Source: Vitrella brassicaformis CCMP3155 (Eukaryota; Protista; Chromerida). From it: a stretch of 64,000 nt of DNA. The stretch is taken from contig CDMY01000490.1 of the NCBI GenBank assembly GCA_001179505.1, positions 3,027 to 67,026 on the forward strand, given 5' to 3'. Positions 30,327 to 33,531 of the stretch are shown in pieces; position 1 is the stretch's first letter, and the number at the start of each line of letters is the position of its first letter. The notes beneath the pieces were generated by a model. The model did no database searches. It saw only the letters and a list, made by a program, of their open reading frames with translations, and was not told the DNA's origin. Made by a program: the position numbers and the translations under genes.

Positions 30327-31550
30327 CTACGTGCCTCTCATCATCCGCCCTCTCGGTGGTGGAGGCGCCTCAGGGTCGTTGGCAAGCCTCTCGACGAACT
30401 TGTCTTGGTTGAATGTGAGCAGCTCCTGTTGCGGCGCCGGCAGCAGCGAGGCCACCCCGTCCCAGTAGCTCGATGGCGGGATGAGGTTGAACAGCAGCTT
30501 GGCGAGGAACTTGACGGGCCGCGACTGCACCAGAAACACCAGCGGCACGCACATAAGGAACAGACGGCGCTTCTGCTCCTCGCTGGGTGTGCTGCCCGAC
30601 GATGATCCCCCAGAAGGGCCGAACCGCCACAGCACCAGCAGTAGGGCCGCCAGGCGAATGGTCGACGCCCAGTGGATGTCCAGATTCAGCTGCACAAACC
30701 GATGCAGCCGCCCTTGCAGCGATCGGGGCCGCCTGGGGTAGTGCACCACTGCTTCTGGGAAGGCCTGGAGGGGCGGGGGAGCGGTGGGATGGTCGGTGCT
30801 CTCGCCTTCTTCATTCTGCTGGCTGCCCTCAGGACTTGTGGGCGGTCTTGCCTTCTTCTGCTTGGTCATGTGTTGCTGCTCCATAGCTTCCTCGAGAGCA
30901 CGATAGGTGTCGCGAAAACGGGCGATGAGCATGACGCCTGACGACTCGTCGCCCTTTAGCTCATCCCCCAGACCATCGGTGTCCGACACGTCCTCTCCAC
31001 TGTCAGCACCGCTGGCCCGCCGCCACAGTGCGGCATAGTACTGCAGGGCAGCCAGGTGAGCCGACAACGCAGCCCGCTTCTCCTCCTCGTTCATCTTCGA
31101 CACCACCATCTTGCCTTGTGTCTGATCGACGGGCGGCACCATGTCCAGCAGCACCGTGGCAGGCTCGTCCGCTGACAGGTCGTCAATCACATCCGCGAGG
31201 TCCATGTCGTCATCCTTCAGGGCCTGGCTGCCCACAAACAGCCGCTGGAGTGTCGCAGGCGGTTTCCCGGGGTAGCTCTGTTCGATGGCTGCCTTGAGGG
31301 ACCGGACCAACGTGTCGTGAGGGGACAGGGTGATCAGCTGCTTGTGATCCAGATATCGGCTGCCGGACGCTGTCGTCACGACCAGACGCACATCGGCCGC
31401 CAGGGAGCAGCGGAACAGGAAAGCGGAGACGGTGCAGAGGAACACGCGAAGCGCGGGGAAGGGTATAGCACTCCTGGATGAGCAAGATGCGCCGCAGCGT
31501 GGATCTGCAGCAGCATCGCCATTATGGATCCACCCATTTATCGTCGGCAT
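30327..31550 (-). CDS. Ubiquitin-like domain membrane protein (HERP/HERPUD-like layout), intronless
   Basis: Ubl fold motifs VRSLKAAIEQSYPGKPPATLQRLFVGSQALKDD, two C-terminal hydrophobic segments (IRLAALLLVLWRF; RLFLMCVPLVFLVQ), and an N-terminal hydrophobic stretch before the Ubl. Confidence 0.7.
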   Translation of the reverse strand: MPTINGWIHNGDAAADPRCGASCSSRSAIPFPALRVFLCTVSAFLFRCSLAADVRLVVTTASGSRYLDHKQLITLSPHDTLVRSLKAAIEQSYPGKPPATLQRLFVGSQALKDDDMDLADVIDDLSADEPATVLLDMVPPVDQTQGKMVVSKMNEEEKRAALSAHLAALQYYAALWRRASGADSGEDVSDTDGLGDELKGDESSGVMLIARFRDTYRALEEAMEQQHMTKQKKARPPTSPEGSQQNEEGESTDHPTAPPPLQAFPEAVVHYPRRPRSLQGRLHRFVQLNLDIHWASTIRLAALLLVLWRFGPSGGSSSGSTPSEEQKRRLFLMCVPLVFLVQSRPVKFLAKLLFNLIPPSSYWDGVASLLPAPQQELLTFNQDKFVERLANDPEAPPPPRGRMMRGT

Positions 31551-31856
31551 GGGGGGCGTCAGAATCAATGCAGCTGGCTCAATTGTGCCATAGATCCACG
31601 ATGGAAGGGAAGGGCCTCTGGGCGACAGAACCGCTGCGAGCTTGAAAACGATCCACAATGCGAGCTCAGCCTGCAGCTGCTCGTCGAGAAGAAGACTCGC
31701 CACGGTCACAACCCGCGCGGGACGGTATCCTGAAGCAGATCCAGCAAACAGGCGAGTCGAGTGTCGACGTCAACAAGACTCTTGAACCTTCCCTCGCGTC
31801 TTGATCCCGTCCAGGCATCCATCCATTTGGCTGCTCTGCCCAGCGCGACAGCCGAG

Positions 31857-33213
31857 ATGGGTCGTAACGCGAAGGTGACCCGCACGCTGGATTACCAGCG
31901 GCAGAAGAAGGCCCTCAAGGGCAAACCATGGAAGGTCTCGCGCCACAAGGAGGCACGGCAGCAGCTCAAGGCACGACTCAAGGCAGAAAAGGGTAAACAA
32001 AAAGCAGACAGACAGACAGACAGACAGACAGACATCTCTCTGGGGCGCATTCGGATGCATATGAGTACAAATCAATCGTCTCTCCTGGTCTCGCTCGTTT
32101 GTCATGCACTGTCATGTATTGTATATGTATGCAGTGTCCGCCCAAGATATGGAGGTGGAGCACGGACCTGACAACCCTGTGGCGGCAACACCAGCACCAG
32201 CACCAACACCAACGTCAGCAGCAGCAGCAGCCGCTGCTACCCCACCAGAGAAGCAGAGCAAGAAGGTCTCCTCAAGTGGTCCGCATCGCCACTTCTTCAT
32301 CCCCGTCACGGAGAGGTCGGCCGACAGCCGCAAGTTTGACCCATCACACCCATACAAACAGGTGGGTGCCGGGGAATGACTAGATAGAAGGGGAGAGGGC
32401 CACACGAACGTTGGCTGCGTGTGTCGTCCGTCAGTGCAATGACATCTTGGCTGGTTGCTTCACGGCCTCGGTGTGTCTGTCCTTCGGCGTCCGCGACAAC
32501 GCCGACATCACAATGGTCTTTGGCGATGAGACCGAGGACAGGCGGCCGTCACTCACTCTCAAGCTCGACAACAAGTTCTACAGCGCACTCAGGGACCGGA
32601 ACAAACGCGCCACAGAGCAGGTGTGTGCGGCTGGACGTGACCGTCCATCTTATGTGTGATTTCTCCATGTGTGTGTGTGTGTGGCCGTGCAGGCAGTGAT
32701 ATCTCTGATGCGCGAGGCCCTCACTGCCAGTGAGTCCCCTGTCAAGGGCGCGACGGTCGAGCGGCTGCCGGGGAGTGCGTCCTTCAAGGCCGTCTTCCAG
32801 CGGTTTGTGCGGGCGATAGATCCGGAGGGCACAGAGGGGAAGCTGTTGGTGGTCTTGAAGGAGGGAGGGGAGCCGATGCTCACATGGCTGGGGCGGGTGC
32901 AGCGGGGCGGCATGACCATCGGCAGCAAGTGGCCGCACCTCATTGTGCTCCTCGGCGCCCAACACGACGTGCCGCCAGAGGAGATGCAGGTGGGTGTGTC
33001 ATGGCATACACACATGTGACATCAACGAAACGGGTGGGACGGGAAGGCTTCGCATCCATCTCTCGTGTGTGTGTGTATCAACAGGCGATTCGTGAGGTGT
33101 GTGTGAGTGAGAGGATTGACGTGCAGCCGTTGTCGCTCGGTCCCATGGCGATGCACGCAAAGGACTGCATCACTGTCTTCCAAAACTACCTGGACGTCGA
33201 CCTGCAGACGTAG
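31857..33213 (+). CDS. trmY: TrmY-like SPOUT methyltransferase (tRNA pseudouridine-54 N1-methyltransferase / DUF358 family) with basic N-terminal extension, 5 exons
   Basis: Phase-compatible GT-AG splicing gives DILAGCFTASVCLSFGVRDN, AVISLMREAL...VKGATVE, VVLKEGGEP, IVLLGAQHD and LSLGPMAMHAKDCITVFQNYLD. These parallel the TrmY motifs D.L.RC...A..LSH..R, IKKAL..PG..V, LH..G, F.LGDH.G and ISLGP..LHA..CI...H..LD. Confidence 0.8.
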
Positions 33214-33531
33214 ATAGATGTCCAGACACACAGATGTGACAGACGGACGGACGGACGGACGGGTGGATTGGATCGAGTCTGGCTTAACGTATGCCATAGC
33301 CTTTTCGTGTGATGCGCCGTCGATGTGATGACTGGCCGGATGAATGGCAAATGCATTTGATCGTCTCTCTCTCGCGTAAGTTATGTATACGATGAATGTC
33401 ATTTGCACATTCACACGCACAGCACATGACGTCATGTCACGTCAGGTCACGTCACACGCGGTCGCTGCGCTGCACTGCACTGCACTGCACACACACTCGC
33501 ATCTATCTACATCATAGCTGAGTCCAATCAA

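What the first reader, a model, noticed from the sequence alone, without database searches (positions are those of the whole stretch)
31857..33213. Spliced eukaryotic homologue of the archaeal tRNA m1-pseudouridine-54 methyltransferase TrmY
Seen: five exons with canonical GT-AG, phase-compatible joins encode a SPOUT protein carrying the full series of TrmY/DUF358 motifs, ending in LSLGPMAMHAKDCITVFQNYLD. Known: TrmY makes m1-pseudouridine-54 in archaeal tRNA and also occurs in some gamma-proteobacteria. Eukaryotes normally have Trm2-made m5U54, and their characterised m1-pseudouridine writer is Nep1/EMG1 acting on 18S rRNA. Inference: this is an old, domesticated horizontal acquisition. Its added Lys/Arg-rich N-terminus (MGRNAKVTRTLDYQRQKKALKGKPWKVSRHKEARQQLKARLKAEK) resembles a nuclear/nucleolar signal, so it may write an undescribed eukaryotic RNA modification on tRNA, rRNA or snRNA. 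The knot loop is altered (LGAQHD versus LGDHxG), which could indicate a changed substrate.
Basis: partly seen in the sequence, partly recalled or inferred. Interest (0 to 1): 0.75.

Follow-up and report, generated by a model that had tools for sequence, protein, structure and literature searches.

The report
Spliced TrmY-like RNA methyltransferase in Vitrella
A marine alga related to malaria parasites (Vitrella brassicaformis) carries and expresses an intron-containing gene for a very divergent relative of TrmY, an enzyme described mainly from archaea that methylates pseudouridine in transfer RNA, so a eukaryote may make an RNA mark not yet reported in eukaryotic tRNA.

Summary
The five GT-AG exons (31857-33213, +) give a 975-nt reading frame of 324 aa. 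This is identical to the deposited Vitrella brassicaformis protein CEM17538.1 / A0A0G4FSA2. Transcript-like contigs from several public runs skip all four introns at exactly those joints.

The full protein passes Pfam's threshold for PF04013 (TrmY/DUF358) and matches no other SPOUT family. Its predicted fold matches the four solved DUF358/TrmY structures best, with Nep1 second. A symmetric homodimer through the knot is predicted.

It is a distant homologue:
- It scores 51.6 bits against NCBI's TrmY equivalog cut-off of 183.
- Only 16 of 35 conserved TrmY columns are kept.
- The invariant Gly and near-invariant Arg of the GR[LM]D motif are Tyr and Lys.
- LGDHxG has become LGAQHD.

The genome also has Pus10, a separate Nep1/EMG1 and Trm2/TrmA-like genes.

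The origin is unresolved. ML trees put the protein with Halobacteria TrmY, but an AU test accepts a position outside all canonical TrmY equally well. The only sign of other eukaryotic members is one ESM Atlas cluster (mostly haptophyte), whose sequences I could not fetch.

The scan noted this same stretch once before (s1-197298). Function is inferred, not shown.

The parts
31685..31856 (+). 5' UTR (approximate transcript start)
   Evidence: Transcript-like contigs begin at 31685-31724. The 1295-nt JGI contig has 172 nt before the ORF. There is no other ATG in this stretch.
31857..31992 (+). Exon 1 coding part: aa 1-45 plus the first base of codon 46. This is the Lys/Arg-rich N-terminal extension that archaeal TrmY lacks.
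   Evidence: 16 of 45 residues are K/R and 3 are D/E. No Pfam hit.
31993..32134 (+). Intron 1 (142 nt, GT..AG), which contains a (GACA)n microsatellite
   Evidence: Records 1, 5 and 17 run without a break from 31991 to 32134 (table 8).
32135..32361 (+). Exon 2: an Ala/Pro/Thr/Ser-rich linker (aa 46-94), then the start of the SPOUT domain from 32281 (aa 95-121)
   Evidence: The AF2 model has its first strand at aa 98-104.
32362..32434 (+). Intron 2 (73 nt). It lies between Q121 and C122, inside the counterpart of the archaeal GR[LM]D motif.
   Evidence: The joint 32358/32432 (cut +3) is seen in X1, X2 and X7. Alignments.
32435..32620 (+). Exon 3 (aa 122-183): D124, the ILAGC helix and R141
   Evidence: PF04013 positions 30-71 and NF002560 positions 30-62. 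Conserved columns.
32621..32692 (+). Intron 3 (72 nt, with an in-frame stop)
   Evidence: The joint 32616/32689 (cut +4) is seen in X1, X2 and X7.
32693..32989 (+). Exon 4 (aa 184-282): the central, most divergent part. It holds the first knot loop VLKEGGEP, a lineage-specific insertion (about aa 250-266) and the altered loop LLGAQHD at 32948-32968.
   Evidence: No Pfam or PDB sequence hit on its own. No real relative among 1.84 billion representatives other than itself. Alignment.
32990..33084 (+). Intron 4 (95 nt)
   Evidence: The joint 32986/33082 (cut +3) is seen in X1, X2 and X7.
33085..33213 (+). Exon 5 coding part (aa 283-324, stop TAG at 33211-33213). It holds the C-terminal knot motif SLGP...H..DCITV..NYLD at 33133-33195.
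   Evidence: PF04013 positions 166-194 (E 5e-4) and NF002560 positions 167-197 (E 1.5e-5). This region is the core of the predicted dimer interface, aa 300-323.
33214..33361 (+). 3' UTR (approximate), which contains a (GGAC)n repeat. A convergent downstream gene overlaps its transcript assemblies.
   Evidence: Contigs end at 33338-33349. The JGI contig has 148 nt after the stop. A 465-aa gene lies on the opposite strand downstream.

Best explanation
Shown: this is a single-copy, intron-containing, transcribed nuclear gene of Vitrella brassicaformis. Its product has a basic 45-aa tail, a low-complexity linker, and a 230-aa SPOUT knot domain that is homologous to TrmY (PF04013).

Inferred: the domain dimerises through its knot helices like other TrmY proteins and binds S-adenosylmethionine in the knot. 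The Gly, Leu, Ser and Pro positions that shape the knot loops are kept. It would then methylate N1 of a pseudouridine in RNA.

The most likely substrate is pseudouridine 54 in the T-loop of the subset of cytosolic tRNAs in which the alga's own Pus10 makes that pseudouridine instead of Trm2 making m5U54. The basic tail would add unspecific RNA affinity and/or nuclear import.
For: Gene and expression:
- Gene model and splicing.
- Identity to the deposited protein.
- Single copy in the genome.
- Eukaryotic neighbours (SRP14) on the same transcript assembly.

Family and fold:
- PF04013 scores 30.7 bits against a gathering cut-off of 25.5 (E 3e-7), covering model positions 30-194 of 198, with no other SPOUT family at E up to 10.
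- NCBIfam TrmY gives E 7.7e-14.
- The AF2 model has pLDDT 82.5. Its top five PDB matches are 2qmm, 2qwv, 3aia and 3ai9 (DUF358/TrmY) at E about 1e-12; Nep1 follows at E about 4e-6.
- The ESM Atlas's own model gives the same ranking.

Dimer:
- The homodimer scores 0.77, with the best of 3 controls at 0.00. That mark was reached by 21 of 30 proteins solved as pairs of one chain and by 0 of 23 solved as single chains.
- The runs agree in at least 95% of contacts, and the partner's pLDDT is at least 89.
- The pass may be from memory of solved TrmY dimers.

Conserved sites and pathway:
- R97, F99, F113, D124, R141, L238, G242, L270, G271, S299, G301, L318 and D319 are kept.
- Pus10 is present in the same genome.
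- M. jannaschii TrmY methylates Pus10-made pseudouridine 54 in human tRNA transcripts in vitro (PMC6380271).
Against: - The protein scores 51.6 bits against the 183-bit equivalog cut-off of NCBIfam TrmY, which both haloarchaeal and Vibrio TrmY pass.
- Nineteen of 35 conserved columns are changed. These include the 100%-conserved Gly (to Y119), the 98%-conserved Arg (to K120), and the D/H of LGDHxG (to A272/Q273).
- The roles of these residues could not be looked up, because the primary TrmY papers are not held.
- The genome also has Trm2/TrmA-like genes, so m5U54 is probably the default.
- The AF2 model was built on an alignment of TrmY sequences, so it leans towards that fold.
- No activity, localisation or nucleoside data exist.
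Confidence: 0.45

Rival explanations
1. Same chemistry, different target. The enzyme still methylates N1 of pseudouridine but has been retargeted in the nucleus or nucleolus to rRNA, snRNA or another RNA. The basic N-terminal tail would act as a localisation or RNA-binding module.
For: The 45-aa tail has 36% Lys/Arg and is absent from all archaeal and Vibrio homologues. The motifs most likely to contact RNA have changed: GR[LM]D and the C-terminal RR. Mj1640 is promiscuous for pseudouridine in vitro and works in human cells (PMC13171889), so retargeting needs little change.
Against: A separate Nep1/EMG1 orthologue already covers the known rRNA m1-pseudouridine site. Haloarchaeal TrmY also lack the C-terminal RR.
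Confidence: 0.25
2. Decayed enzyme. The fold and dimer are kept, but catalysis is lost or changed. The protein would then act as an RNA-binding or chaperone-like protein, or methylate another atom or base.
For: The protein sits on a very long branch (2.6-3.1 substitutions per site). The invariant Gly, the near-invariant Arg and the DH pair of the knot loop are lost. The score is far below the equivalog threshold.
Against: The reading frame is intact across five exons, and transcripts appear in runs of several studies. The loop-shaping residues of the knot and the dimer interface are kept. About 13% of canonical TrmY also lack the Asp of LGDHxG.
Confidence: 0.2
3. Origin, reading A. The gene entered the chromerid lineage (or an ancestor) by horizontal transfer from a Halobacteria-related archaeon. 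It then gained introns, the N-terminal tail and host codon usage.
For: The 14 best phmmer hits are all class Halobacteria TrmY, the best at 41 bits. Vitrella plus Halobacteria forms a clade with UFBoot 97 / SH-aLRT 98, and 967 of 1000 bootstrap trees agree; the smaller set gave 78%. Rare states are shared: D152, P244, D275, Y317 (NYLD). An insertion at the same place, and D309, are shared with two haloarchaeal sequences. The protein is not acidic, so composition does not explain the grouping.
Against: The AU test does not reject Vitrella lying outside all canonical TrmY (delta lnL 1.43, p 0.51). In the larger set the constrained tree is even 0.76 lnL better (p 0.5). One quick tree placed the protein with Thermoplasmatota instead. 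Vitrella lacks 5 of 21 Halobacteria-diagnostic states. Other eukaryotic members, which could break the long branch, were not available.
Confidence: 0.4
4. Origin, reading B. This is an old eukaryotic lineage of TrmY-like genes that survives patchily, for example in chromerids and haptophytes. It was either inherited from the archaeal ancestor or acquired very early.
For: By language-model features, the nearest ESM Atlas cluster is a 57-member PF04013 cluster that is 83% eukaryotic, mostly Haptophyta. Its representative is 301 aa, so it is also extended. The AU test allows a basal position.
Against: The protein is not closer to Asgard canonical TrmY or to the divergent Asgard paralogue: profile scores are 22.6 and 13.8 bits, against 35.4 for the euryarchaeal set. 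No eukaryotic relative was recovered by three word searches, by a full phmmer of exon 4, or by a metagenome scan. Atlas scores of 0.84-0.92 are leads only.
Confidence: 0.3
5. Artefact: an archaeal contaminant or a chance chain of ORFs.
For: None beyond the archaeal affinity of the domain.
Against: There are four spliceosomal introns that transcripts remove. Neighbours such as SRP14 are eukaryotic. CDS GC of 0.61 and GC3 of 0.76 fit a 57% GC window. The DNA-like run X3 keeps the introns over this stretch, and the spliced ORF stands in three further public assemblies.
Confidence: 0.01

Closest known systems
Archaeal TrmY (Mj1640, Haloferax HVO_1989; COG1901 / DUF358 / PF04013; NCBIfam NF002560)
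   Same: Same Pfam family above the gathering score. Best fold match. Same strand and helix order of the SPOUT knot. The knot loop residues (L..G, LG, SLGP, C-I-T, N.LD) are kept. A homodimer through the knot is predicted. The partner enzyme Pus10 is present in the genome.
   Different: - Identity is only 20-30%.
- It scores 51.6 bits against the 183-bit equivalog cut-off.
- G to Y119 and R to K120, with two extra residues in the GR[LM]D motif.
- LGDHxG has become LGAQHD.
- Insertions at about aa 154-158, 170-180 and 250-266.
- A 94-aa N-terminal extension.
- Four spliceosomal introns.
- A eukaryotic host that also has Trm2-like genes.
Bacterial DUF358 / TrmY of Vibrionaceae (PDB 2qwv, VCA1059; plasmid and chromid copies)
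   Same: Same family and fold. It is the best PDB hit by sequence (E 0.13) and is within the top Foldseek group. Both have the spacing K-x3-[DE]-I-L-A-x-C where archaea have GR[LM]D[IV]L[CA]RC.
   Different: phmmer gives only 11-18 bits, against up to 41 for Halobacteria TrmY. In trees the Vibrionaceae sit in another starred clade.
Nep1 / EMG1 (PF03587), the known eukaryotic N1-pseudouridine methyltransferase of 18S rRNA
   Same: SPOUT fold, the same chemistry expected, and the second-best structural match (TM about 0.5-0.57).
   Different: No Pfam EMG1 hit even at E up to 10. Vitrella has its own separate EMG1 gene on contig C562.
Divergent second PF04013 paralogue of Asgard archaea
   Same: Also a low-scoring PF04013 member beside a canonical TrmY.
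   Different: The Vitrella protein scores lower against its profile (13.8 bits) than against canonical TrmY profiles (22.6-36.7 bits). In the trees, rooted on this paralogue, it was not placed beside it, but the AU tests do not reject a position on that side of the root.

Membership tests
TrmY / DUF358 (Pfam PF04013 Methyltrn_RNA_2) | Whole-protein score at or above Pfam's gathering cut-off (25.5 bits) | tested here: met
   30.7 bits, E 3.1e-7, model positions 30-194 of 198. The domain alone scores 32.2 bits.
TrmY equivalog (NCBIfam NF002560, tRNA (pseudouridine54-N1)-methyltransferase) | Score at or above the curated equivalog cut-off (183 bits), which licenses the functional name | tested here: not met
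   51.6 bits (E 7.7e-14). Haloarchaeal L204 scores 217.9 and Vibrio pVS127 TrmY scores 208.3.
TrmY / DUF358 | SPOUT alpha/beta knot fold most similar to the solved DUF358 structures | tested here: met
   Foldseek ranks 2qmm, 2qwv, 3aia and 3ai9 at positions 1-5 (E 1e-12 to 1e-10, TM by target 0.68-0.75); Nep1 follows at E of 4e-6 or weaker. The Atlas models agree. Caveat: the model's alignment consisted of TrmY sequences.
TrmY / DUF358 | Homodimer formed through the knot region | tested here: met
   The prediction scores 0.77, with the best of 3 controls at 0.00. That mark was reached by 21 of 30 solved pairs of one chain and by 0 of 23 single chains. The interface is aa 118-139, 178-184, 244-246 and 300-323. 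This is a prediction only and may reflect memory of solved TrmY dimers.
TrmY / DUF358 | Conserved N-terminal motif G-R-[LM]-D (Gly 100%, Arg 98%, Asp 99% of 148 sequences) | tested here: not met
   Vitrella has Y119-K120-Q-C-N-D124. Only the Asp is kept, and two residues are inserted.
TrmY / DUF358 | Knot loops L-x-E-x-G, [FV]-L-G-D-H-x-G and S-L-G-P...H-C-I-T..H-N-E-L-D | tested here: inconclusive
   L238, G242, L270, G271, S299, G301, L318 and D319 are kept. D272A, H273Q, G275D and E317Y are changed; the last two states also occur in Halobacteria TrmY.
TrmY / DUF358 | SAM-dependent N1-methylation of pseudouridine 54 of tRNA | not testable with these tools
   Needs an enzyme assay or nucleoside mass spectrometry.
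TrmY / DUF358 | Co-occurrence with Pus10, which makes the pseudouridine 54 substrate | tested here: met
   Pus10_C (PF21238) is matched exon by exon on G000:C635:173047-174165, covering model positions 1-230, with the best hit at 82 bits.
Nep1 / EMG1 (PF03587) | Profile match to EMG1 | tested here: not met
   No EMG1 hit at E up to 10. A distinct EMG1 gene lies on C562 at 89.5 bits.

The most novel reading that the evidence does not exclude
Vitrella, probably together with haptophytes and other marine protists, carries a eukaryote-adapted TrmY lineage. Working downstream of Pus10 or other pseudouridine synthases, it would write stand-alone N1-methylpseudouridine into nuclear-encoded RNA (tRNA position 54, or a new site). 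That modification is so far known in eukaryotes only as the intermediate of m1acp3-pseudouridine in 18S rRNA.
Probability: 0.3. Interest if true: 0.75.

Novelty: new variant of a known kind. Interest (0 to 1): 0.55.

Why it matters
Reviews list TrmY as archaeal. [quoted passage not shown] Another tabulates it as Archaea only (PMC9508554). A third notes only a few bacterial members (PMC1829167). No paper in the searched library mentions PF04013 in a eukaryote.

An expressed eukaryotic member, in a genome that also has Pus10, makes a concrete question testable: do some eukaryotes use the archaeal pseudouridine 54 to m1-pseudouridine 54 pathway in the tRNA T-loop alongside the m5U54 pathway?

N1-methylpseudouridine is also of practical interest for mRNA therapeutics, and Mj1640 is already used as a labelling tool (PMC13171889). 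A mesophilic eukaryotic relative could therefore be useful.

The protein itself is already in public databases as an uncharacterised protein with a precomputed PF04013 hit. What is new is the recognition and the context, not the sequence.

Tried and rejected
- Family scans exon by exon gave only sub-threshold hits. The whole protein was needed.
- Exon 4 alone against the PDB found nothing.
- A full phmmer of exon 4 against 1.84 billion representatives found only the protein itself. The two other hits are unrelated bacterial repeat proteins.
- Three word-index searches found no eukaryotic relative: the whole protein, a 15-row profile, and the domain region at E up to 10. In the profile search, 41 of 161 hits were not listed.
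- The search for related loci on genome contigs with the domain found nothing.
- The 3-row alignment on metagenome contigs returned 74 loci, at 22-30% identity, found with motifs shared by the Vitrella and two haloarchaeal proteins; many come from brine or 'marine metagenome' records and none is closer than the haloarchaeal TrmY.
- Hypothesis 'descends from the divergent Asgard paralogue': not favoured by profile scores and free trees, though the AU tests leave a position on that side of the root open.
- Hypothesis 'related to Vibrionaceae TrmY', suggested by the shared spacing of the N-terminal motif: not supported by scores or trees.
- The primary TrmY papers (PMC3285930, PMC3285931) are not held. 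The catalytic roles of individual residues therefore could not be checked.
- Raw ORFs flanking the gene gave no Pfam hits. Context came from called genes on transcript contigs instead.
Full report
**Observation**

The stretch 31857-33213 on the + strand contains five open segments. Joined at GT..AG boundaries, they give an uninterrupted reading frame of 975 nt and 324 aa. The exons are 31857-31992, 32135-32361, 32435-32620, 32693-32989 and 33085-33213.

A phmmer search with exon 4 against 1.84 billion representative proteins returned one true hit, P0001. It is 324 aa long and identical to my spliced translation. P0001 is the deposited 'unnamed protein product' CEM17538.1 / UniProt A0A0G4FSA2 of Vitrella brassicaformis CCMP3155. 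It is also present in MMETSP and EukProt.

The window is contig C490 of a 72.7-Mb, 1064-contig assembly.

**Transcripts**

Logan contigs of runs X1 and X2 (study P1) and X7 (study P4) lie on the exons only.
- They skip 32358/32432, 32616/32689 and 32986/33082. These are the predicted joints once the ambiguity of 3-5 shared letters is allowed for.
- The same records run on without a break from 31991 to 32134 across intron 1.
- The DNA-like run X3 covers the introns.

These runs are only guessed to be RNA. However, a form that lacks all four introns, found in several assemblies beside an intron-containing genomic form, is what spliced mRNA looks like.

An exact-protein look-up found the uninterrupted 975-nt ORF on three further contigs (ERR558152, SRR646408, JGI 3300017297). 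One of them also carries an SRP14 gene and two other spliced genes.

The annotated ATG is the only ATG between the transcript contig start at 31685 and the ORF. The gene is single copy. Contamination or a chance ORF chain is excluded.

**Family**

Exon by exon, only weak collinear hits to PF04013 and NCBIfam TrmY appear.

The whole protein gives a clearer result:
- It scores 30.7 bits for PF04013, against a gathering score of 25.5 (E 3e-7).
- The match covers model positions 30-194 of 198.
- No other SPOUT family appears at E up to 10.

Against NCBIfam's TrmY equivalog it scores 51.6 bits (E 7.7e-14). The curated cut-off is 183 bits, which a haloarchaeal TrmY (217.9) and a Vibrio TrmY (208.3) both pass. 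The protein is therefore a clear homologue, but not an equivalog by curated standards.

**Structure**

An AlphaFold2 model of residues 95-324, built with 14 archaeal TrmY as the alignment, has pLDDT 82.5 and pTM 0.83.

Foldseek against the PDB ranks the DUF358/TrmY entries first:
- 2qmm, 2qwv, 3aia and 3ai9 come out at E 1e-12 to 1e-10, with TM by target 0.68-0.75.
- Nep1/EMG1 follows at E of 4e-6 or weaker.
- RsmE and TrmD come next.

The model's alignment biases it towards TrmY. The ESM Atlas's own model of the protein, which I did not make, gives the same order: TrmY at TM 0.74/0.84, EMG1 at 0.65.

A homodimer prediction scored 0.77, with the best of 3 controls at 0.00. That mark was reached by 21 of 30 proteins solved as pairs of one chain and by 0 of 23 solved as single chains. 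On eukaryotes it was reached by 17 of 29, but by only 1 of the 7 with no older solved relative. The runs agree in at least 95% of contacts, and the partner's pLDDT is at least 89. The interface runs through the knot (aa 300-323, 244-246, 118-139). Because TrmY dimers are solved, this shows likeness rather than binding.

**Conserved sites**

148 archaeal TrmY have 35 columns that are at least 75% conserved. Vitrella keeps 16 of them:
- R97, F99, F113, D124, R141, P159, L193, G210
- L238, G242, L270, G271, S299, G301, L318, D319

The rest are changed. The most notable changes are:
- the invariant Gly to Y119 and the 98% Arg to K120 in the GR[LM]D motif, with two extra residues;
- the C-terminal RR to LQ.

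About 13% of canonical TrmY also lack that Asp, and Halobacteria TrmY also lack the RR.

Intron 2 sits exactly inside the altered GR[LM]D counterpart (Q121|C122). That joint is confirmed by transcripts.

I could not check the roles of these residues, because the two primary TrmY papers are not held.

**Additions**

Residues 1-45 hold 16 Lys/Arg and 3 acidic residues. Residues 46-94 are 61% Ala/Pro/Thr/Ser. None of the archaeal or Vibrio homologues has this extension. There is no hydrophobic signal-like start, as read directly from the sequence. Nuclear or nucleolar import, or extra RNA affinity, is a reasonable inference but untested.

**Pathway context**

The genome encodes three related functions:
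- Pus10: four exon-wise matches cover Pus10_C positions 1-230 on C635.
- A separate Nep1/EMG1 on C562.
- TrmA/Trm2-type m5U methyltransferase matches on C321 and C847.

The TrmY-like gene is therefore not a replacement for Nep1, and m5U54 is probably still made.

Human PUS10 makes pseudouridine 54 in selected tRNAs, and M. jannaschii TrmY methylates exactly that residue in vitro (PMC6380271). Mj1640 also methylates pseudouridine broadly in vitro and in human cells (PMC13171889). A eukaryote that holds both enzymes could thus make m1-pseudouridine 54 in a subset of tRNAs, or m1-pseudouridine elsewhere.

**Relatives and origin**

I found no close relative by any of these routes:
- exon 4 against the representative library;
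- three word-index searches;
- a scan of GTDB genomes;
- a metagenome scan, which returned only TrmY loci at 22-30% identity found with haloarchaeal-type motifs.

The only sign of other eukaryotic members is the ESM Atlas. There, the nearest cluster by language-model features is a 57-member PF04013 cluster that is 83% eukaryotic and mostly Haptophyta. Its representative is 301 aa. The score is 0.92 with the domain and 0.84 with the whole protein. This is a lead, and I could not fetch its sequences.

I collected TrmY from several groups:
- Halobacteria (31 of 31 genomes sampled);
- other Halobacteriota, Thermoplasmatota, Thermoproteota and Asgard archaea;
- Vibrionaceae chromids and plasmids.

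The evidence for a link to Halobacteria is as follows:
- The 14 best phmmer hits of the Vitrella domain are all Halobacteria TrmY, up to 41 bits. Vibrio scores 11-18 bits.
- Profiles of canonical TrmY score higher (22.6-36.7 bits) than the profile of a divergent second PF04013 paralogue found in many Asgard genomes (13.8 bits).
- Under LG+C20+F+G4 (PMSF), a quick 113-row tree and two careful trees place Vitrella within or beside Halobacteria. Support is SH-aLRT 100 in the quick tree, UFBoot 78% in the first careful tree, and 97/98 in the second, with 967 of 1000 bootstrap trees agreeing.
- Rare character states are shared, as is an insertion at the same site as in two haloarchaeal sequences.

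The evidence against is as follows:
- One quick tree put Vitrella with Thermoplasmatota.
- The branch is 2.6-3.1 substitutions per site.
- The AU test does not reject Vitrella outside all canonical TrmY (delta lnL 1.43, p 0.51). In the larger set the constrained tree was even 0.76 lnL better (p 0.5).

I therefore treat a Halobacteria-related donor as the leading hypothesis for the origin, not as a result. In both cases the gene is old in its host: it has four introns, GC3 of 0.76 in a 57% GC window, and an added N-terminus.

**Verdict**

TrmY-family membership and splicing hold. Horizontal origin, localisation and a new substrate remain inferences.
- Mechanistically I favour a dimeric SAM-dependent pseudouridine N1-methyltransferase acting on Pus10-made pseudouridine 54 of some tRNAs (about 0.45). 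The alternatives are retargeting to another RNA (about 0.25) and loss or change of catalysis (about 0.2).

The sequence is already public as an uncharacterised protein with an automatic PF04013 hit. No paper in the library mentions a eukaryotic TrmY, and reviews call the family archaeal.

The scan had noted this same stretch once before under a similar title (s1-197298).

Noticed in passing
Asgard genomes G002-G065; e.g. L131:881-1516 (+) beside L131:1471-2127 (-), and L132:884-1516 (+) beside L132:1474-2133 (-): 42 of 61 sampled Asgard genomes have PF04013, and about 30 carry two genes. One is a canonical TrmY (130-180 bits). The other is a divergent paralogue (about 30-70 bits, often matching only model positions 32-130). 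In two genomes the pair lies tail to tail. Pfam confirms that the paralogue is PF04013.
   Followed up: partly
G000:C847:15211-15618 (+), locus L178: A very strong, uninterrupted TrmA-type (PF05958) match: 183.8 bits over model positions 2-137, at the end of a short contig. It looks bacterial or organellar in type. It could be a plastid- or mitochondrion-targeted TrmA, or a contaminant contig.
   Followed up: no
L299 (Vibrio scophthalmi plasmid pVS127, 65219-65821): An annotated trmY sits on a conjugative (MOBH, MPF_G) 127-kb Vibrio plasmid next to recX. Other Vibrionaceae copies are on chromid-like 'plasmids'. TrmY is therefore on mobile DNA in bacteria.
   Followed up: no
window 32347-32449 (aa 117-126) compared with L299-L302: Vitrella and Vibrionaceae share the spacing K-x3-[DE]-I-L-A-x-C where archaeal TrmY have G-R-[LM]-D-[IV]-L-[CA]-R-C. 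Trees do not group them, so this may be convergence. Intron 2 lies exactly in this motif.
   Followed up: partly
window 31994-32043, 33233-33273, 32200-32231: There is a (GACA)n microsatellite in intron 1 and a (GGAC)n repeat in the 3' UTR. The GCA/GCC-coded Ala run in exon 2 attracts many unrelated contigs in read laying.
   Followed up: no
window 30327-31709 (-), and downstream of 33430: An upstream gene on the opposite strand (372 aa when spliced, no Pfam hit) starts about 150 bp from the TrmY-like ATG, which suggests a shared bidirectional promoter. A convergent 465-aa gene downstream overlaps in transcript assemblies; contig X7 record 17 and L303 span several genes. SRP14 lies further upstream.
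   Followed up: partly
L204 (G095) and L206 (G128): The two Halobacteria-class TrmY closest to the Vitrella protein come from small genomes (2.1 and 1.9 Mb). They carry an insertion before the LSDHHD strand, and HADD instead of HADH. Their organisms are unnamed here, and their identity would matter for the donor question.
   Followed up: no
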